From contig CATNEN010000038.1 in the NCBI GenBank assembly GCA_950097015.1, forward strand, positions 28,148,001 to 28,212,000: DNA of 64,000 bases, given 5' to 3'. The position numbers and the translations under genes are program-made. Numbering within the stretch: position 1 is the stretch's first letter; the number at the start of each line of letters is the position of its first letter. Under the pieces are notes generated by a model that did no database searches, was not told the DNA's origin, and saw nothing but the letters and a program-made list of their open reading frames with translations. Below are positions 827 to 35,721 of this stretch, in pieces. This DNA comes from Macrostomum hystrix (Eukaryota; Animalia; Platyhelminthes).

Positions 827-2552
827 AAGGCAATTTCGGCTCGATAACCTGGTGCAATTTGAAGCTGCACAGTTTCCAGGCGCGATGGCTGGATCCAGTT
901 ATTAAGCCGAGAACTGCTGAGCAAGGTGAGATGCCTACCTGATACTCAATTGAGTATTCAAGTTCAACATTCATAGTAGATTTGAAATGGATAGAATATA
1001 GAGGGTGGACTGTACAATGAGGTAGGTAATGGTTAGGGTGAACAGGTAGCATTGAATAGATTGTAGGTAAGGTAGACAGGTAGCATTGAGTAGATAGTAG
1101 GTAAGGTAGACAGGTAGCATTGAGTAGATAGTAGGTAAGGTAGACAGGTAGCATTAAGTAGATAGTAGGTAAGGTAGACAATAGGGTGGAGTAGATAGTA
1201 GCTAGGGTAGACGGGTTCGATTAAGTAGAATAGTTGGTAGGGTAGACAGTTTAGATAAGGTTGAAGATTGTAGGTAGGGTAGACAGTAGTATTGAAAGCA
1301 TTATAGGTAGGGTAGACAGTAGGATTGAAAGCATTATAGGTAGGGTAGACAGTAGGATTGAAAGCATTATAGGTAGGGTAGACAGTAGGATTGAAAGCAT
1401 TATAGGTAGGGTAGACAGTAGGATTGAAAGCATTATAGGTAGGGTAGACAGTAGGATTGAAAGCATTGTAGGTAGGGTAGATTGTAGGATTGAGTGCATT
1501 GTTGGTAGTGTCAGACTGGAGTTACTAGAGCTACCGTAAGAAGATAAAGGTAGAATATGAATTAACCTTGCATGATAAAAACTTCATCACTGTGATTCGC
1601 ACTCGCACAGAACTAACCGAAGTTCGCATTCGCAAAGTCAGCAAGCTCATTCGCGATTCCGGCCGACGAGTCTCCGTCACTTCGCCTCGGCGCCGATCTT
1701 CAACTGCGGCTTCTTCAGCGTCGGCAGCTGCGGCAGTCGCGGCCGCCGCGTCAGCCCTTGGCATTGACGACATCCTGCCTGAGCGATATCGCCTGATCCA
1801 GTGGACATCAACCAGGAAGATTACACCGCCAGCTGATCAGGCTCCCGCAGAGCAGCAGCAAGATCAGGACAACTCGTCAGTACTATTACAGGTTCCAGTT
1901 TCCATGGCAACTAAAACTCAACGCCAGCAGCAGCAGCAGTCGGAGCTGCAGCGGGCCAGTGGTGGCAGCCGTCGCGGCTCCGTCGTGTCGCTGCTCTTTG
2001 GTCGGATGCCGCCGTTCTTTCGACGGGCCGATTCGCTGGGCGAAGTCCGCGAAGGTGCACACAGACAACAACAGCAGCAGCAGCAGCAGCAGGTAAGAAT
2101 TGCCCATTCGGCCGACTCCTGAGCACTCATCCGATAAGTCACGACCTGATGGCCCTTATTACCGCAAACTACAGGATTCCTCGCCAGTGAAGAAGAAATA
2201 TTCAGATGGTGTGGATGCGCCAAGCGATAGCCAAGGTTCGAACCTCATCCTGGCGGCTAGCAAGAATCGCAGGCGTACAGTGGCCCCTGAAGTGCTAGCC
2301 AACCAGATTGAACAGTTTCGCCAGCGTCGGGACACCATCCGGTCAGATCCGGATGATTTGAGAGCGACGGCCGCAGCTGACGCGGCTTCTTCCGTGCTGT
2401 CCGTGGAGCCTTCGCCGCCTCTGGCAGCTCCGGACGTTCATTTTCACGCCGTTGACGGCGAGCTGCAAGAATTTTATCAGAGCACTTTGTCCAGCTCGAA
2501 TTTGCCTTTTAGTAGGTTCGATCCGCGATTGAGACTGCCTCATCGGAGGCTC

Positions 2553-26882: not shown

Positions 26883-29800
26883 TTAATGTCCCGCCGTGGT
26901 CCATTTCCCAATGAGTTCCTTATCGCGCTGGCTAAGCAGCTCAGGCTTGTAGACAAACGGCACTTTAATTATCTCCGTGAAACCCTCGGCTATCGTTGGC
27001 TCGGCGTACTTACTAGCGTACATACGATAGGCCACTAGTGGAACGCGACGAATTTTTGACTTTGTCTGGCTCTGAGGAAACATGTTCAGGTGGTCGGCCA
27101 GGGCTCGCTCTGTTGTGAGCAGCAGGCAGCGGACTGGTACCTGCCGGAGTAGAGGATTAGGGATATGTATTTCGGTCATTGCGGGGGACGCAAGGTTCAT
27201 AGTAATCGCAAATAGAATCTAATTAGGTGATTAGGGATGATATCAGGTGGGTAGGGATGAGGTCAGGCGAGTAGGGATGAGATCAGGTGAGTAGGAATGA
27301 GGTCAGGCGAGTAGGGATCAGATCAGGTGAGTAGGGATTAGATCAGGTGAGTAGGGTTGAGATCAGGTGAGTAGGGTTGAGATCAGGTGAGTAGGGATGA
27401 GATCAGGTGAGTAGAAATGAGATCAGGCGAGTAGGGATCAGATCAGGTGAGTAGGGATTAGATCAGGTGAGTAGGGTTGAGATCAGGTGAGTAGGGTTGA
27501 GAATAGGTGAGTAGGGATCAGATCAGGTGAGTAGGGATCAGATCAGGTGAGTAGGGATAGATCAGGTGTGCAGAAAAAAGACTCACTTTAAGCCGTTTAG
27601 CCAACTCAAGAAACTGAGCCCTCTCCTGCTTCGACGGATTCGTGTTGTCCACAATGACCGACTGTCCCTCCTTCAGAGCTTTCTCGGCCGCTTTCAAGCA
27701 CGCCTGCGGCGTTTTCAACGTGTCCCTATTGGCCCTGACGTAGCCCCGCTCGCCGACAAACAGCCGCTCGGCTAGCGTCGACTTGCCGCAGGCCGGCGGG
27801 CCAACTGTAAGCAGCAATTCCGGCTGCTTGTCCGTGAGTAAATTCTGCAAAAATTTCCGGTGTTATAAGGCACCGTTTTAAATTTCCGATACGACGCTCG
27901 AAATACAGAAGAAAAATAGTTGAACGAGTTGTTAAATTTTATTTTAATATTTTCTCGGAATATATTTTGCTGTTGAGTTCCTTTTTGTTATTTAGTTTTT
28001 ATCGTGCTTCTCTTACCGACATTAGGTTTTACCTTTTACTTTTTGCGTAATAAATAAAACCGAAATTATTTCAAATAGGGTAATTTTGTTTCATAATTTG
28101 CCAGAGTTCGATTCATTTAGTCATTTGGAACGCATAAATTATAAATATCAAATTATTGCCTGATTTAATCAATAGTTCTTGTCTATAATTTGTTAAGAAA
28201 TCCTGTTCATCGTGATTTTAATATGCTCTCTTTTATTTGAAAAGCTTAAAAGCAAAATTTTCTAATCCTAATATTTTTGTGTTTGAAACTAAATTTGCAC
28301 GAACATATAGTAAAGAACTTGAATGGACAGTTCAGGAAAACTTGATTGAGTTTAGTATTTTAAATTTAACACCGGAAAATGAATTCAGTTTAACAAACCT
28401 CCGGCAATCGATTCTTAGCTGCCGACTCCAGCATAATATGAGGTGTAGGCGCACCCCAGTCAAACTTGGCCACCGGCTCGTCAAGGAAAAACTCCTCAGG
28501 TGTGTGAAACGGCAGGCCAATGTTGGCTGCAAACATTCTGTCCGAGCAGGAGAAGTCCTTCTTGTGCGAGCCCTCGGCTGGACGACCGGCCGCGTCGCCG
28601 ACGAAGAAGCTCGAAGACTTGTCGAACTGACAGATTTTGAATGAGTGTGCAGTTTTATATCAGCTACTGTCTGACAGTTTTATATCAGCTACTGTCTGAC
28701 AGTTTTATATCAGCTACTGTCTGACAGTTTTATATCAGCTACTGTCTGACAGTTTTATATTAGCTACTGTCTGACAGTTTTATATCAGCTACTGTCTGAC
28801 AGTTTTATATCAGCTACTGTCTGACAGTTTTATATCAGCTACTGTCTGACAGTTTTATATCAGCTACTGTCTGACAGTTTTATATTAGCTACTGTCTGAC
28901 AGTTTTATATCAGCTACTGTCTGACAGTTTTATATCAGCTACTGTCTGACAGTTTTATATCAGCTACTGTCTGACAGTTTTATATCAGCTACTGTCTGAC
29001 AGTTTTATATCAGCTACTGTCTGACAGTTTTATATCAGCTACTGTCTGACAGTTTTATATCAGCTACTGTCTGACTGTTTTATATCAGCTACTGTCTGAC
29101 TGTTTTATATCAGCTACTGTCTGACAGTTTTATATCGGCTACTGTCTGACAGTTTTATATCAGCTACTGTCTGACAGTTTTATATCAGCTACTGTCTGAC
29201 AGTTTTATATCAGCTACTGTCTGACACACTAAACAGCTTTAAAGCATCAGTTTTCACTGACCTCAACTCCGCCGTTGCAGTCTCTAACGTAAAACTCCCA
29301 AGCGCCAATATCTGGCTTGCGGTAGTGGCTTACTGAGCTAACTAGAATGACCTGTTTAGATTGAAAAAGTGCTTAAACGATAAATGTTGTTGGACTAATA
29401 GGAAATGAATATGAAAAGCTAAGCACTTACATCTACAGGCACTCCTAACTCGTTAATAACCAATTCGCATTTCTTCATTATCTCAGCAGGCATTGTAGTG
29501 CCCTTCTCAAATCCCGACTGATTAGAAATGAACAACAATTTGTAACCGTCCGAGTGCAGCTGGTGCAGCTTTACTGGCACCGAATCGTACAGCCAGCACC
29601 AGTCGGATGCTCCTTTGGGCCATTTGCCGCCAGATTTCGGTTTAATAACACACCAATCAATGTCAAATGCGGCTAGTTTATTAACTGGTTTAGCATCTGA
29701 TTCAGACAGAACGTACATGTGCGGCACATCCGCTTTAGCAAGGCCGCCAGCTTGAGTCCATTCTAGGTTGCCAGGCAACGCTTTGGCGGCGCTTTTAGAA

Positions 29801-29901
29801 GCAGACGCTGCAGCCGCCGCCGCTGTTCGTGCACTTTTCGGCCGAGTCGGCTGACCCGACCTGGCCGACTCTGGTGCAGCCGCTGCCTTTCGTTTGACCA
29901 T
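26883..29901 (-). CDS. PNKP: Bifunctional polynucleotide phosphatase/kinase (about 434 aa, no FHA domain)
   Basis: Exons 29901-29431, 29351-29262, 28626-28399, 27844-27587, 27140-26883, all phase 0. HAD phosphatase motifs [53 protein letters not shown]. Kinase P-loop [31 protein letters not shown]. Confidence 0.93.
27225..27568. repeat. PNKP intron minisatellite, 20-bp unit (GATCAGGTGAGTAGGGATGA)
   Basis: Tandem copies. Confidence 0.95.
28650..29225. repeat. PNKP intron minisatellite, 25-bp unit (CAGCTACTGTCTGACAGTTTTATAT)
   Basis: About 23 near-perfect copies. Confidence 0.97.
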
Positions 29902-31811
29902 GGCGAGCGGGCTAGTCTTAAGTCTGAAAAAGTACGAAAGAGTTTATCAAATTTCTTTTTCAAATAGGCAAAAACGTTCATTTATTTTCAAAGTTGCATT
30001 CGATCCACACTACTATTAGTAGAACTATGCACAAATTACATAAATTTGATTTTAAGCTGGACCCTAAAATGCATTTTTAAGCAGTAAATGAATAATTAAA
30101 ATAATCTCAAAGACTTGGTTTATGACATCTCATTGCATTGGATAATTATGCAAGAACAATAATTATAAAAGTGTTAATTTATTGCTGCTCATAAGACAAT
30201 TTCAAATGCTAGACAAATGAGAAATTAATTAAAAGCAGGGTAAAATGTAGTAGACTAGTAGCTAAAATAAAAAATGCATAGAAATGGTGATGCAAATGTT
30301 TCAACAGTCTTTCCGAGTTTGGCTCTTCCTATACTCTATATTAAAAGTAGCTAATGCTCTCAGTATGTATGTCACTGTAATTAATTATTCATATAATAAA
30401 TAGTATGTCTCAGTATCATATTGTGCCTCGAAAATAACTAATTCTAGATTACATTACTTCACAATTAGATTGCAGCAACAAATTTTCTTCATTAGGTTTA
30501 TTAATGTATTGCATTACATTAAAACAAAATATGAATGAAAAGTCGAATTAGAACTAGGTTTTGGCTGACTTAGACAATCGGTCCAGTCCAGTGGCAGGGG
30601 TTTATGATCACTCAGACTCAAAACAGATCATTTAAGAGTCTTAAGTGTGTGAAATACCTGCAACTCAGCCCCTAATAGTAGACCTATCCTATGGCCACAA
30701 TGGCTCACTTAGCTTAACTGCTAAGCTACTGAATTGCCTACTAGCACAAGCTACCCTTACAAGTTACTAGTTATGTGGATGGCTAGTTAAACATGACCCC
30801 AGGACAAAAAACCTAGCTATGCTACCAAATGCTTAATCATAAAACGCTAATATCAACAAAAAGCTTACTTTAGATATCATAAGTTAGATAGGTAAGATAG
30901 CTAATAACCGTTATTGTAATATGCATTTGAAATTGTATGTATCAAGAATTATATTTTTGTATACAGTTTAACACTGTCAGAAACAAATAAATACCAAAAG
31001 AGGTATATTATATAAAAATTCACGAAAGTCATAAACGAATAACGCTAAAATATATAAAACGCGCACATTAAAAAAACAATAGACGAGAAAAGTTAATTTG
31101 CCGCCAACGTTTTGAGTTCATAGATGCTCGTTATAATAATATTTTTGACAGTGAATAAAACTTGAAGCTCGTAAGAGCTTTATTTAATTTTTCGGACAAC
31201 GACGATCAATTTTCAATAGACTGTTATAAATGAATCAAAAGAAATTTAATTCGATACACGCTTGGTAGATGCCGTGACTTAACTTTCTCCTATTATCCCT
31301 AAAAACAAGCGCCTCGCCCCGCACGTAACTCGCAAATAGCTTTACTTATCTTACAGATTTTATGTTTGAGTGCACTCATTTTCCTGTTCTTTTACATGAC
31401 TTTAAACGCATTTGCTGGAGAGAAAAGTGCATTAATTATGTGCTGTAAAAATATAAATAGTGCTAATAGCAATAAATTGTGACAATGTAAATAAACTGCA
31501 ATGAGGTCATATATATACATCCACAGATATCTAGAATACTATATGTACTTGCATACATATTTTTGCGTTAAATTAGTCACAAATTTTCAAAGAAATTCAT
31601 TAACGAGCAGATATTTAATTATGGCAGTGTTAAATTTTCCGATAGAGCAGAGCTTCTGCATAAGTTTAGTTCCTAAAATCCCTCAGCTAAATGTATTTAA
31701 GTTTTTGGCATCACCCTCACAGTACCTCAATTAATATTTAGTTCATTGAACTGAAAAGTGAGAAAAATACTTAAAATGCGATAAAAGTTAGGGAAATGCA
31801 AATGTGCTTAT

Positions 31812-33634
31812 CAAGGACCACTGTAGTATTGGGTGTCCAAAAAGTAGTGATACTTTTGCTCGTATAGCCTTACTGCATGCTTGAAAATCAGCAAGTTTGG
31901 TGTTGTTGGAAAGCGAAAAATATCAGCCTTAATTTGACTAAAAAATCATCCTCATATGTTGTTTTTAAAAAAAGTTATCACTGTCTATTTGAGCAAGGGT
32001 TGCTCATAGACTTACAAAAATACTGTATGGTTGACTTTGTTGAGTTTTTATCTGCCTCAAAGATTCATGAAGCTTTAGAGCTTAACAAATCAATAAATGT
32101 AAACCAATAAATACTGGGGTAGCATTTTACGAGCGTACGAGGGTTGCTTTTTTGTCTGTGGTAAATTGTGGCTAAGTCTTCTTCGCACTGCCTGCTTGCT
32201 TCTGCCTGCCTGCCTGCTTCTGCACTGCCAGCTCATTTTTCTTTCACAAGTGCTTGCTTTTTCAAGACCAGATTCTGTTCAACTGACAGTTATGGACGTG
32301 CGCTCAAAGGAAGGACAGCGACACGCAATTCACCCACTATGGAGTATTGGGAAAAGTGGACAGGAGATTTACCATCATCTGTGCAGCATTCACGGAGCCG
32401 AAGCAGTAAGTCGCATGACGGTGTACAGATGGGTCGAGCAATTTGAGTCAGGAAGAACAAATTTGGCTGACTTGCCAAGGCCAGGAAGGCCATCTGCACC
32501 AAGCTCAAAGGCTTTGGCTGACCGGATTCTTGATCTGCTGGAAGAAGACTGCAGAATGACAATTCGTGAGATTGCTGACAGACTCGACACGCCACGATCA
32601 ACGGTTCATCTCTGCCTGACCAATATGAACTTCGTTAAGCTGAGCGCCCGCTGGGTCCCAAAGCTCCTCACTGCTGATATGCGACTGCAGCGCCAGCAGA
32701 CATGCCAAGGGAACCTGAATCTGGTAAGTCAACGCGGTGGCTGGAATCAGTTCCGCCAGTTGATTGTTACTGGCGACGAGACGTGGGTTCCACATTTTGA
32801 CCCGCCGACAAAGCAAGAGTCTAAAGTGTGGACACTTAAGGGTTCCGACGCACCACTCAAGGCTCGCCGTGAAACTCACTGTAAGAAAATCATGCTGTCA
32901 GTTTTCTTTGACTGTAATGGCCCAATCACCATTGACTTCCTGGAGCCGAATACGATGATCAACGCAGACCGTTATTCGTCTCTCCTTGCAAGCCTGAAGG
33001 CAGACATCCAAAATAAGCGGCGCTCGGGAGTCAAGCCAGTCATCCTGCATCATGACAACGCCCGGCCGCACACTGCCCACCAAACAATGGAGGCCATCAA
33101 AAAGCTAAAGTTTGACCTTCTGCCTCATCCGCCATATTCGCCAGATCTCGCGCCTGCGGATTTTGCCCTTTTCCCTCAATTGAAGCGCCACCTGAGGGGC
33201 CGTGTCCATGTCAGCCGTGATCACCTGGAACAGGAAGTCCGCAGAGTACTTTTGCACGTGATTCCGCGACAGATCTACGCAGATGCGATTGATCACTTGT
33301 TTCGTCGCTGGGAGAAGTGCGTGCAATCGGGGGGTAATTATGTCGAGAAAGCTTCCCTCCCTGATGATGATGAGTCATACTAACTGTCGAAACTTCTTGA
33401 CCTGTTACACCATTCATAAATTCATTGTAACTCTATGGCTGACCATGTTGTGTGTTTCTATTCATAACTTTGTTATAGGTTGTGTTTTTGTTAAATGTTT
33501 GCAGTCAAATTAAAGCTGATATTTTTCGCTTTCCAACAACACCAAACTTGCTGATTTTCAAGCATGCAGTAAGGCTGTACGAGCAAAAGTATCACTACTT
33601 TTTGGACACCCCTCGTATAATACAGTGGTCCTTG
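31812..33634 (+). mobile_element. Composite DNA transposon: mariner with ~110-bp inverted repeats, enclosed by 14-bp outer TIRs and an 8-bp TSD
   Basis: Inner IR 31831-31939 versus 33503-33615 (right tip CCCCTCG-TA is a typical mariner end). Outer IR CAAGGACCACTGTA 31812-31825 / TACAGTGGTCCTTG 33621-33634. Direct repeat GTGCTTAT at 31804-31811 and 33635-33642. Confidence 0.9.
32292..33383 (+). CDS. mariner-family transposase, D,D34D (363 aa), intact ORF
   Basis: Two HTH regions, WVPKLL linker, TGDETW, HHDNARPH and YSPDLAPADF, with exactly 34 residues between the 2nd and 3rd Asp. First ATG at 32292. Confidence 0.95.
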   Translation: MDVRSKEGQRHAIHPLWSIGKSGQEIYHHLCSIHGAEAVSRMTVYRWVEQFESGRTNLADLPRPGRPSAPSSKALADRILDLLEEDCRMTIREIADRLDTPRSTVHLCLTNMNFVKLSARWVPKLLTADMRLQRQQTCQGNLNLVSQRGGWNQFRQLIVTGDETWVPHFDPPTKQESKVWTLKGSDAPLKARRETHCKKIMLSVFFDCNGPITIDFLEPNTMINADRYSSLLASLKADIQNKRRSGVKPVILHHDNARPHTAHQTMEAIKKLKFDLLPHPPYSPDLAPADFALFPQLKRHLRGRVHVSRDHLEQEVRRVLLHVIPRQIYADAIDHLFRRWEKCVQSGGNYVEKASLPDDDESY

Positions 33635-34054
33635 GTGCTTATATCTGCGATATAGCTCATTTTCTAACGAAGCAATTTGTTAGCTACAATTTGAAATAAT
33701 GTATAGGATGTTTTTGCTACTCTGCTAAATGTATTAATTTGCTAAATGATGTGAAATATTAAAAAATCGCCTACCTGCAATAATTATAATTATAATTAAA
33801 TAGCACGATCAGTTAATGAACCGCAACGAAACCACAATTAAAACAAATATCAATAAAAGAAATAAACAGGACGAAGCCAATAAAGAAACAGATTCTGATA
33901 GGATGGAAATAATCAGTGTTTTATTTTTTAATATCGAATTAATTAGTCTGACTACAGGCGGGGTGCTAATTTAATGCTGATCAACTGAGCTTGTTTAATT
34001 GAGTATAGAATATAACAAATTGCTGTCTTAATTATGAAATAAAGCTCAGTGGGT

Positions 34055-34720
34055 TCAATTCAGAATGCCAACTTTGCCGCCGTCGCTGTATTCAATCACC
34101 TGGCTCAGCAGCTTCGTCGGCCAATCGGTCGCGTTGTTCGCATCGTCCAACTGTTCCGCACTGAGTGCTGATTGGCTCTGACGGAACAGATGTACGTCAC
34201 CCAGCACCTCTCTGATCTGCACCACCGAGTCCTGTCCGCCGATGACTTGGCGAATGTCAAACACGTTGATGACTTTGTAGAATTGCGGTGATCCCCAAAA
34301 AGGAGCCGATTCAGTAGCTGCCGTTGATGACAGTCGGAGCTCTTCACAATTCGGTTGATTGTAGCTAGACAATAGTGTTCTTTGCTGTTCAAGATGATCG
34401 ATTTCCACAATGATGGCAAACACTTTTTCTGGCGGCTTCGGCGGGCGACGCGGCAGCCGAATCGTGCAACGGTAGCCACCGTCAGCGTAGATTGTCTCGA
34501 TGAAACTGTCCGCCTGCCAGATGTGACAGACGGACAATTTTAGTTCTAGTCCATCATATTCTTGATCTTTAGGCACCAGACGGCCGTCCTCTTTGGTGTC
34601 AAGGACAAACTGGAACCAGGCGACATTGTCGTCGTCAGTTCGCCTTTTCACAATGGCCGGACGCGCGAAGCCTTGACAATCTTCGGACAATTTTGCTAGA
34701 AAGTTCAATTCATTACTCAT
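34055..34720 (-). CDS. Hypothetical intronless protein (about 221 aa from MSNELNFL)
   Basis: Non-repetitive, GC-richer open frame in AT-rich surroundings, with globular-looking composition. No family recognised. Confidence 0.55.
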   Translation of the reverse strand: MSNELNFLAKLSEDCQGFARPAIVKRRTDDDNVAWFQFVLDTKEDGRLVPKDQEYDGLELKLSVCHIWQADSFIETIYADGGYRCTIRLPRRPPKPPEKVFAIIVEIDHLEQQRTLLSSYNQPNCEELRLSSTAATESAPFWGSPQFYKVINVFDIRQVIGGQDSVVQIREVLGDVHLFRQSQSALSAEQLDDANNATDWPTKLLSQVIEYSDGGKVGILN

Positions 34721-35721
34721 GACAATTGCCAGCTTTTGCATTCAGTAACTTTCAATCGATTTTAGGAATCGAAATCGCCGTCGGCTCCTCCATCCTGATG
34801 GCGCCGGACGGAGGCGATGGAAAAAAATTCGGCAGCGACGATGCGGGTTGTGTGTTCTGTGTTCAGCCGACATTGGAAAGTGAAGTAAGTTTAAGAGATT
34901 TGTTTTTTCGTTTTGTCAGATTCGCACAAAGCACGACCACCGGCACCGCCACCGCCGGGCCTGCTCAGCCGAGGATCACCTCTGGGATTTCTGGCTGTTT
35001 ACCCTGCGGGTGTTGCGAGATGGATTGGAAAAAATCGCTTAATTTTCTATGCACTCTACTGATTGTTGGGCATTTAGAAGTAGCGTGATAAGAATATGAA
35101 AATAAAAAAAGTGTGTCTAGGCTAAAAGAAAATTGCTAAAATGAGATTTCCTGGAAATGTTCTGCAAATAAGATTTTGCACATAAGTGTACAGTTTGTGC
35201 ACTTCAACAGCGTACAGAATGACGAAACTGGCTATACTGGCTATAGAGTCTTAGTAAACATTTCTTGGAAATTAGGCGCACTTTTCGCAATTCATTTTCC
35301 TGGAAATTTTCAGACGACCTAAAGCTCGCAGATAGTAAAACAGTTTCTTAGAAATTATTTTAGTTTTCGATAATGCTATGAGTATTTTAACACAGTTAAA
35401 GCAGTTAAAACAGCGTCTGTTAGAAATCATTATAATAAAAAGTGAAGTTTTTCTAGGGAAAATGGACTTTTTGGGTTGGAAAATTTGGGTTGACTGATTG
35501 GAAATAAGGCTAGAAATTAGAATAGTTTAAAAAGAAATATACTTACTCCTAATAGAGTAAACAATATACAGTTTAGCAAATATAGCTCGTAATTTTAATC
35601 ATCGAATATTAGCAAAGTTTAATAAAAAGGACTTACCCAGAATTGACTCCATTTTCGTTGGCAGTCAAAAAAAAGGCAGGCAAATTTCTATTGGGTTAGA
35701 AAACTGTTATTTATACTGCAA

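What the first reader, a model, noticed from the sequence alone, without database searches (positions are those of the whole stretch)
31804..33642. Intact mariner transposase enclosed in a shell with 14-bp TIRs and an 8-bp TSD
Seen: GTGCTTAT-[CAAGGACCACTGTA ... mariner ... TACAGTGGTCCTTG]-GTGCTTAT, with the mariner inverted repeats starting only 5 nt inside the outer repeats. Established: mariner transposases duplicate TA only, whereas 8-bp TSDs with CA-starting TIRs are hAT/P-type signatures. So the last insertion event for the outer ends was catalysed by a different transposase. Inference, two models: (a) a cross-superfamily composite, in which a mariner has acquired foreign ends and is mobilised in trans as cargo (its own left tip is damaged: TATTGGG versus TACGAGGGG); (b) a mariner inserted in the centre of a minimal ~34-bp hairpin MITE (CAAGGACCACTGTA-GTATAA-TACAGTGGTCCTTG).
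Basis: partly seen in the sequence, partly recalled or inferred. Interest (0 to 1): 0.82.

Follow-up and report, generated by a model that had tools for sequence, protein, structure and literature searches.

The report
Mariner inside a P-element excision scar
A young mariner jumping gene in the flatworm Macrostomum hystrix landed in the middle of the 34-base scar that an unrelated P-type jumping gene probably left when it cut itself out, so the odd "shell" is most likely two ordinary events stacked, not a hybrid transposon.

Summary
In detail: GTGCTTAT | CAAGGACCACTGTA … TACAGTGGTCCTTG | GTGCTTAT encloses an intact DD34D mariner at 31804-33642.

The shell is not a new kind of end for the mariner. 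All other copies of this mariner in the genome that I read have plain TA + CGAGGGG ends. The shell/mariner junction occurs only here.

The 14-nt tip is the terminus of a P-superfamily family with 145 exact tips in the genome. Its copies have perfect 8-bp duplications, and a 7.1-kb copy encodes a THAP domain and a P-transposase core.

Twenty tiny relics of 34-101 bp carry only the two tips. Of the 19 whose flanks I read, 14 keep a perfect 8-bp duplication. Nearly all have different junctions, often with templated filler. Terminal retention piles up at exactly 21 nt. This is the anatomy of Drosophila P-element excision junctions, which have 17-nt tails.

Most likely a P-type element inserted, then excised and left a 34-bp scar. 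A mariner then integrated at a central TA, and its left tip was later damaged (CGAG to TT). Two other copies outside any shell carry similar tip lesions.

The parts
31804..31811 (.). Left copy of the 8-bp target-site duplication GTGCTTAT made by the P-type element.
   Evidence: Other members of the family have perfect 8-bp duplications of different sequence.
31812..31828 (+). Left P-type terminal remnant, 17 nt (CAAGGACCACTGTAGTA), equal to nt 1-17 of the family terminus. Its last TA (31827-31828) is the mariner target.
   Evidence: Family terminus CAAGGACCACTGTAGTATAACAGGACGGG... in L032, L035, L051, L060, L061 and L062.
31829..33615 (+). Mariner element, 1787 bp. It has a damaged left tip (TTGGGTGTCC instead of CGAGGGGTGTCC) and an intact right tip (...GGACACCCCTCG).
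   Evidence: Nine further full or nearly full copies at 97-100% identity, each flanked by TA. The window copy differs from L002 at 6 of about 1734 inner columns.
31829..31944 (+). Left mariner inverted repeat, about 116 nt, unusually long for a mariner.
   Evidence: I1: arms 31831-31944 and 33498-33611, 96% complementary.
32292..33383 (+). Open mariner transposase gene: 363 aa, DD34D, N-terminal HTH domains.
   Evidence: ORF. (Pfam Transposase_1, HTH_48, DDE_3). (Mos1 3hos, E 3e-41, residues 5-352). Same 363-aa ORF in L003, L005 and L006.
33498..33615 (-). Right mariner inverted repeat, with the canonical tip.
33616..33617 (.). Second copy of the mariner TA target duplication.
   Evidence: reverse complement reads ...CTGTATTA|TA|CGAGGGG.
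33618..33634 (-). Right P-type terminal remnant, 17 nt (TAATACAGTGGTCCTTG). Nt 1-14 are exact. Position 15 differs from the main consensus but matches the variant seen in L031.
33635..33642 (.). Right copy of the 8-bp target-site duplication GTGCTTAT.

Best explanation
The structure comes from two unrelated cut-and-paste transposons acting one after the other at one site.

1. A P-superfamily element with terminus CAAGGACCACTGTAGTATAAC... inserted and duplicated GTGCTTAT. The family and its 8-bp rule are shown; this particular insertion is inferred.
2. Its transposase excised it with a long staggered cut. That left single-stranded terminal tails on the donor DNA, which end joining sealed into a 34-bp near-palindromic scar, CAAGGACCACTGTAGTATAATACAGTGGTCCTTG, between the two GTGCTTAT copies. 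This step is inferred from 20 analogous relics and from the Drosophila P-element precedent.
3. A currently young mariner (DD34D) integrated at the TA at scar positions 16-17 and duplicated that TA. The junctions are shown; the order is by parsimony.
4. The mariner's left tip then lost CGAG and gained TT. The most likely cause is a transposase-made break at that end repaired inaccurately. The lesion is shown; its cause is inferred.

The result is a single-copy nested insertion that neither transposase can probably move. The mariner has one bad tip. The P remnants lack everything inside nt 17-20 of termini that are more than 120 nt long in whole elements.
For: - Mariner ends: the eight other full copies aligned have TA|CGAGGGGTGTCC...GGACACCCCTCG|TA, bar a few point or tip variants, with unrelated flanks. 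BLAST matches of all the other copies stop at query 28 and about 1816, inside the shell.
- Single copy: the pattern CAAGGACCACTGTA-N(0-30)-GTGTCCAAAAAGTAGTG finds only the window's two junctions in the genome.
- Source family: the 14-mer has 145 exact genomic hits against 0 for the control. Copies of 861-885 bp, 2026 bp and 7110 bp have identical termini of more than 120 nt and perfect 8-bp duplications: gatggaac, ggtatgac, gccaatca, ctgtaagg, aaaagaac, agaagtgg.
- P-superfamily identity: the 7110-bp copy (L061) encodes a THAP domain (E 1e-6) and a 619-aa open exon. The exon matches TNP-like_RNaseH_N and TNP-like_GBD and the Drosophila P transposase structure 6p5a (E 4e-12).
- Relics: 20 relics of 34-101 bp carry exact tips. 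Flanks were read for 19 of them; 14 have perfect 8-bp duplications, all of different sequence, and the other 5 differ at 1-3 positions.
- Retention: among those 19, 21 of 38 ends match the terminus for exactly 21 nt, 12 for less and 5 for 22-23. The last group is about what a random next base gives. No relic lies between 101 and about 760 bp.
- Filler: it is built from imperfect copies of the terminus (TAC..., ...GTA, CTGTAGTTATAC repeats).
- Perfect scar elsewhere: L072 is a perfect 34-bp palindrome with duplication cctcgccc.
- Drosophila precedent: P transposase leaves 17-nt 3' tails on the donor. Sequenced junctions read duplication + up to 17 nt + templated insertion + up to 17 nt + duplication (PMC2895639; 17-nt stagger, 8-bp duplication and internal transposase-binding sites in PMC7776569).
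- Tip lesions recur without any shell: L006 has GGG replaced by T at nt 5-7, and L013 has about 12 nt inserted after nt 3-4.
Against: - No empty, scar-only or P-occupied allele of this site is in the assembly; both flanks are unique. The order of events is therefore by parsimony only.
- Excision and the 21-nt cut were not observed. They are read from relics.
- Two pairs of relics at different sites are identical or differ by one base: L067/L068 (43 bp) and L053/L077 (44 bp). This could mean rare mobility of minis rather than recurrent junctions.
- Landing in a relic is improbable a priori. There are about 20 relics, roughly 1 kb in 220 Mb, and a few tens of mariner copies. So either ascertainment by a very large scan or some target preference is needed.
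- The lost CGAG would be nt 18-21 counted from the P tip. That coincides with the inferred P cut site, so a P-transposase origin of the lesion is not excluded.
Confidence: 0.8

Rival explanations
1. Mini-MITE host. The 34-bp unit is itself a mobile miniature element, moved by the P-type transposase, that inserted here and made the 8-bp duplication. The mariner then landed in it.
For: Relics each have their own 8-bp duplication. Two pairs at different sites are identical or nearly so: L067/L068 and L053/L077.
Against: Nearly all 20 relics have different lengths and junctions, which is not how an amplifying family looks. Retention stops at 21 nt and filler is templated, as in repair junctions. 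Whole elements have termini of more than 120 nt. In Drosophila the transposase-binding sites lie inside the terminal repeats, so 14-21 nt is unlikely to be enough. The identical 43-mers are simply 21 + 1 + 21, a junction that can recur.
Confidence: 0.1
2. Cross-superfamily composite. The mariner has acquired P-type ends and is moved as cargo by the P-type transposase.
For: The perfect 8-bp duplication lies directly outside perfect 14-nt foreign tips. The mariner's own left tip is dead, which would fit a switch of ends. The lost CGAG lies at nt 18-21 from the P tip, next to the inferred P cut site.
Against: The unit is single-copy. No other mariner copy that I read has the shell, and the junction pattern is unique in the genome. 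Only 17 nt of P terminus remain per side, against more than 120 nt in whole elements. Tip lesions of the same type occur in mariner copies with no shell. The same remnant anatomy exists 20 times without any cargo.
Confidence: 0.03
3. Filler capture. After the P-type element excised, the gap was repaired by copying a mariner from elsewhere (template switching), so the mariner never transposed into this site.
For: The left junction is not a clean mariner end. It reads P nt 1-17/18, then T(T), then the mariner from nt 5, as a repair junction might. Repair junctions in this family do carry templated filler.
Against: The right junction is a textbook mariner integration: a complete tip, then TA, then the remnant. 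Observed filler is 1-59 nt and templated from the terminus itself, never 1.8 kb of foreign DNA. No donor flank beyond TA is carried. Similar tip lesions occur in L006 and L013 at ordinary TA sites.
Confidence: 0.05

Closest known systems
Drosophila P-element excision footprints: donor ends with 17-nt 3' tails joined by alternative end joining (Beall and Rio 1997 as cited in PMC7776569; junction tables in Chan, Yu and McVey 2010, PMC2895639).
   Same: Both have an 8-bp duplication kept on both sides, a bounded length of each terminus retained, microhomology joins, and templated imperfect-repeat filler between the remnants. The source element encodes THAP, an RNase H-like core and a GTP-binding insertion domain.
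   Different: Here the retention limit is 21 nt, not 17. The footprints are natural and fixed in a flatworm genome, not recovered in a fly cross. The source family has termini of more than 120 nt instead of 31 bp. One footprint has since been hit by a mariner.
Mos1-type mariner elements (Tc1/mariner superfamily, DD34D).
   Same: TA target duplication in the copies read. The 363-aa transposase aligns over its full length with Mos1. It has the DD34D spacing and paired HTH domains.
   Different: The inverted repeats are about 116-118 nt and the element is about 1.79 kb. From my own knowledge, classical mariners have roughly 30-bp repeats and are about 1.3 kb. This copy has a 4-nt lesion at one tip.
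Nested transposon insertions (one element inside another).
   Same: The inner element has its own target duplication, the outer one keeps its own, and the inner element is the younger.
   Different: The 'outer element' is only a 34-bp excision scar. The pair therefore mimics a single transposon with foreign inverted ends.
MITEs, including very short palindromic ones.
   Same: Short inverted tips flanked by a target duplication of the parent superfamily.
   Different: The relics are not copies of one sequence. They share only up to 21 nt of each terminus and have individual junctions.

Membership tests
P superfamily (source of the shell) | 8-bp target-site duplication | tested here: met
   Perfect 8-bp duplications flank six longer copies, 14 of the 19 relics with flanks read and the window shell.
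P superfamily (source of the shell) | Transposase with an N-terminal THAP domain | tested here: met
   L061 5701-5889(-) matches Pfam THAP PF05485, E 1.1e-6, 29.7 bits against a cut-off of 23.9.
P superfamily (source of the shell) | RNase H-like catalytic core interrupted by a GTP-binding insertion domain | tested here: met
   The 619-aa exon matches PF21787 (28.8 bits) and PF21788 (25.6 bits), both above their cut-offs. It also matches PDB 6p5a, P transposase, E 4e-12 over residues 146-570.
P superfamily (source of the shell) | Long staggered donor cleavage that leaves terminal nucleotides on the donor (17 nt in Drosophila) | not testable with these tools
   Inferred only. Relic retention piles up at 21 nt (21 of 38 ends, none beyond 23). 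A cleavage assay is needed.
Mariner (Tc1/mariner, DD34D) | TA target duplication | tested here: met
   25 of 36 distinct tips read TA+CGAGGGGTG exactly, and the variants are point changes or tip lesions. In the window the TA copies are at 31827-28 and 33616-17.
Mariner (Tc1/mariner, DD34D) | DD34D catalytic spacing and Mos1-like fold-length transposase | tested here: met
   34 residues lie between the D of HHDNARPH and the D of PAD. Mos1 3hos, E 3.3e-41, residues 5-352.
Mariner (Tc1/mariner, DD34D) | Both terminal tips intact, needed for autonomous movement of this copy | tested here: not met
   The left tip reads TTGGGTGTCC against the canonical CGAGGGGTGTCC. The family is mariner, but this copy is probably immobile.
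MITE (the 34-bp unit as a mobile family) | Many near-identical copies at different sites with different duplications | tested here: not met
   The 20 relics are almost all different in length and junction. Only two pairs coincide.
Composite or chimeric transposon (mariner with P ends) | More than one copy of the composite, with independent 8-bp duplications | tested here: not met
   The junction pattern is unique in 220 Mb. Other mariner copies lack the shell.

The most novel reading that the evidence does not exclude
The 17-nt P remnants are still seen by the P-type transposase. The loss of CGAG at exactly nt 18-21 from the P tip would then be the repair scar of an abortive 21-nt staggered cut. 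In that case a mariner is being acted on in trans through foreign ends, which would be an early stage of end capture across superfamilies. A weaker variant is that mariner integration is drawn to the palindromic P scars.
Probability: 0.06. Interest if true: 0.6.

Novelty: new member of a known kind. Interest (0 to 1): 0.3.

Why it matters
The locus itself is ordinary, but it is a trap for annotation. An excision scar plus a nested insertion imitates a transposon with hybrid ends, so composite claims need a copy-number check.

The useful by-product is the set of 20 natural scars of one P-superfamily family in Macrostomum hystrix. They reproduce the junction anatomy known from Drosophila experiments, but with a sharp 21-nt rather than 17-nt limit. 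That gives a concrete, testable prediction for the cleavage stagger of a non-insect P transposase. It also suggests that templated-insertion end joining operates in a flatworm germ line.

The repeat content of this genome has not been described (PMC10468722).

Tried and rejected
- Empty or alternative allele: 312 nt of left flank and 316 nt of right flank each match only themselves. Haplotigs were purged from this assembly.
- More degenerate relics: shortening the tips to 10 nt found the same 15 short relics and no more.
- hAT origin: rejected, because the autonomous copy is P-type.
- MAFFT's alternative placement of the left junction (TA at P nt 13-14, then G + TATT) needs more changes than CGAG to TT. 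I did not adopt it.
- Donor flank under the filler-capture idea: L006 shares a TAATACA word 4 nt out of register, but it differs at 22 inner positions. I treated this as chance.
- Limits: the tool lists only 100 of the 145 tip hits. Older relics with mutated tips are not counted.
- No orthologous locus from another Macrostomum species is reachable with these tools.
- Earlier scan notes by words (THAP, footprint, palindrome together) gave nothing.
Full report
**Where the window comes from**

The window's assembly has 220,453,370 bases in 42 contigs. Contig lengths of 35,345,953 and 13,505,968 appear. These equal the total length, contig number, longest contig and N50 published for Macrostomum hystrix (PMC10468722, Table 1). 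An earlier scan note had named the species, and this confirms it. The paper states that the repeat content was not analysed in detail.

**The observation**

- GTGCTTAT at 31804-31811
- CAAGGACCACTGTA at 31812-31825
- a mariner
- TACAGTGGTCCTTG at 33621-33634
- GTGCTTAT at 33635-33642

The ORF 32292-33383 (363 aa) is open. It has mariner domains, aligns with Mos1 transposase from residue 5 to 352 (E 3e-41) and has DD34D spacing. The mariner's own inverted repeats are long: 114 nt at 96% complementarity, plus the tips.

**What the mariner's real ends are**

The genome holds nine further full or nearly full copies at 97-100% identity, plus deleted copies. In every one the BLAST match stops at query 28 and about 1816, which is inside the shell.

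Reading the ends shows TA|CGAGGGGTGTCC on both sides of every copy, with unrelated flanks. Of 36 distinct tips, 25 read exactly TACGAGGGGTG. So this is a normal TA-duplicating mariner.

In the window the right end is canonical: ...GGACACCCCTCG ending at 33615, then TA at 33616-33617. The left end reads TA (31827-31828) followed by TTGGGTGTCC, so CGAG has been replaced by TT.

The window copy differs from its nearest relative (L002) at only 6 of about 1734 inner alignment columns. It keeps the same 363-aa ORF as L003, L005 and L006. The copy is therefore young, and the tip lesion is far above background divergence.

**What the shell is**

The 14-mer occurs 145 times exactly in the genome, against 0 for the reversed control. 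It is the tip of a family with terminus CAAGGACCACTGTAGTATAACAGGACGGGAAACTCAAAG...

| Copy | Length | 8-bp duplication |
|---|---|---|
| L060 | 861 bp | ctgtaagg |
| L051 | 867 bp | gccaatca |
| L032 | 871 bp | gatggaac |
| L035 | 885 bp | ggtatgac |
| L062 | 2026 bp | aaaagaac |
| L061 | 7110 bp | agaagtgg |

All six have inverted termini identical for more than 120 nt and perfect duplications.

The 7110-bp copy (L061) carries three P-type features on its minus strand:
- a THAP domain (Pfam E 1e-6)
- a 619-aa stop-free exon with the TNP-like RNase H N-terminal domain and the GTP-binding insertion domain
- similarity of that exon to the solved Drosophila P transposase 6p5a (E 4e-12)

The genome holds many further P-type transposase families (72 matches).

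**The relics**

Pairing the tips within 100 bp gives 20 relics of 34 to 101 bp. I read the flanks of 19.
- 14 have a perfect 8-bp duplication, each of a different sequence.
- The other five differ at 1-3 positions, so they are probably older.
- Their interiors are almost all different.

I measured how far each end matches the family terminus. Of the 38 ends, 21 match for exactly 21 nt, 12 for 14-20 nt and 5 for 22-23 nt. That last number is about what a random next base would add. Nothing is retained beyond that, and no relic lies between 101 bp and the roughly 760-bp elements.

The filler between the remnants (1 to 59 nt) is made of imperfect copies of the terminus itself, such as TAC..., ...GTA and CTGTAGTTATAC repeats. 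L072 is a perfect 34-bp palindrome: 19 + 19 nt overlapping at TATA.

This anatomy matches sequenced Drosophila P-element excision junctions: duplication, up to 17 nt of terminus, microhomology or templated insertion, up to 17 nt, duplication. Those junctions follow from the 17-nt 3' tails that P transposase leaves on donor DNA (PMC2895639; PMC7776569). I therefore read the relics as excision scars. I infer, but have not shown, that this flatworm transposase cuts 21 nt inside its ends.

**Reconstruction of the window locus**

Removing the mariner and one TA leaves GTGCTTAT-CAAGGACCACTGTAGTATAATACAGTGGTCCTTG-GTGCTTAT, with a 34-bp unit in the middle. That unit can be read in two ways:
- nt 1-20 of the left terminus plus nt 1-14 of the right
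- 17 + 17 nt with the position-15 variant also seen in L031

Either reading is within the 21-nt limit. All four TA dinucleotides of this unit lie at positions 13-22, so a central mariner insertion needs no special explanation once the unit is hit.

The most economical history is:
1. a P-type insertion
2. excision and end joining
3. mariner integration at TA 16-17
4. the tip lesion

**The tip lesion**

Similar complex lesions at nt 3-7 of the tip occur in two copies with no P shell. L006 has GGG replaced by T. L013 has about 12 nt inserted after nt 3-4. This points to breaks made at mariner ends and repaired inaccurately.

That fits what is known, from my own knowledge, of mariner cleavage of the non-transferred strand a few nucleotides inside the element. 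It also fits an earlier scan note that excision scars of CGAG-ended mariners abound in this genome (s1-310534, not checked here beyond the CGAG ends).

The lost CGAG would also be nt 18-21 from the P tip, beside the inferred P cut. I regard this as coincidence but cannot exclude otherwise.

Model (a) predicted more composites. A junction-specific pattern finds only this locus, so it is not supported. In addition, only 17 nt per side remain of termini that are more than 120 nt long in whole elements. In Drosophila the transposase-binding sites lie internal to the terminal repeat.

Model (b) is right in anatomy. The host unit is better called an excision scar than a MITE, because the relics are not copies of one sequence. 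Two coincident pairs (L067/L068, which are 21+1+21, and L053/L077) keep a small probability for mini-element mobility.

**What is missing**

No empty, scar-only or P-occupied allele exists in this haploid, haplotig-purged assembly. Only 100 of the 145 tip hits are listed. Relics with mutated tips are not counted.

**Earlier notes of this scan**

That agrees with the picture here but is not independent evidence.

**Verdict**

This is a real and neatly resolved structure of a known kind: a nested insertion into a P-type excision scar. The modest bonus is the 21-nt retention limit as a testable prediction for a non-insect P transposase.

Noticed in passing
window 31829-31944 and 33498-33615; also L002-L010: This mariner family has inverted repeats of about 116-118 nt and a length of about 1.79 kb. 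From my own knowledge that is much more than classical mariners. At least four copies keep the same open 363-aa gene (window, L003, L005, L006).
   Followed up: partly
L067-L079, L045, L053, L063-L066; G000:C24:5798692-5798792: Natural scars of the P-type family retain at most 21 nt of each terminus (21 of 38 ends are exactly 21). They carry templated imperfect-repeat filler, which suggests a 21-nt staggered cut and polymerase-theta-like end joining in a flatworm.
   Followed up: partly
L006 (+ end), L013/L017 (+ end), window 31829-31832: Three copies of the young mariner carry complex small indels confined to nt 1-7 of one tip. Elsewhere the window copy differs from L002 by about 0.35%. These may be marks of one-ended cleavage and repair.
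   Followed up: partly
L042, L048, L010 (G000:C1:26624572, C2:7315081, C7:3090363): The same flank ...gaagggaatcagatt precedes a P-type tip at three loci. A P-type end or scar seems to be embedded in another repeat that was copied afterwards. L042's filler also resembles that of the 101-bp relic on C24.
   Followed up: no
L072 (G000:C25:4656270-4656440): A solo right end of the P-type family (ACTACAGTGGTCCTTG) lies 43 bp upstream of the perfect 34-bp scar. Two events may have happened close together, or there was a local rearrangement.
   Followed up: no
G000, 72 places listed: Many distinct P-superfamily transposase lineages (23-63% identity to the L061 exon) are present. Several have stop-free frames of 580-950 aa, so the superfamily is diverse and perhaps active in this genome. 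The exact family has one full coding copy and one partial copy (C1:8986491-8987697).
   Followed up: no
L008 (G000:C34:4311072-4312826): A mariner copy sits inside a 12-bp tandem repeat (tagaatcgcagc)n.
   Followed up: no
window 2276-2289 (-): CAGGGGCCACTGTA matches the P-type tip with 2 mismatches. This may be chance or the tip of a related family.
   Followed up: no
window 27518-29901 (-) and 34055-34741 (-): The insertion lies between two minus-strand ORF sets. One (29419-29901, 27518-27850) looks like a polynucleotide kinase/phosphatase-type gene by eye. The site is about 1.9 kb upstream of its first ORF.
   Followed up: no
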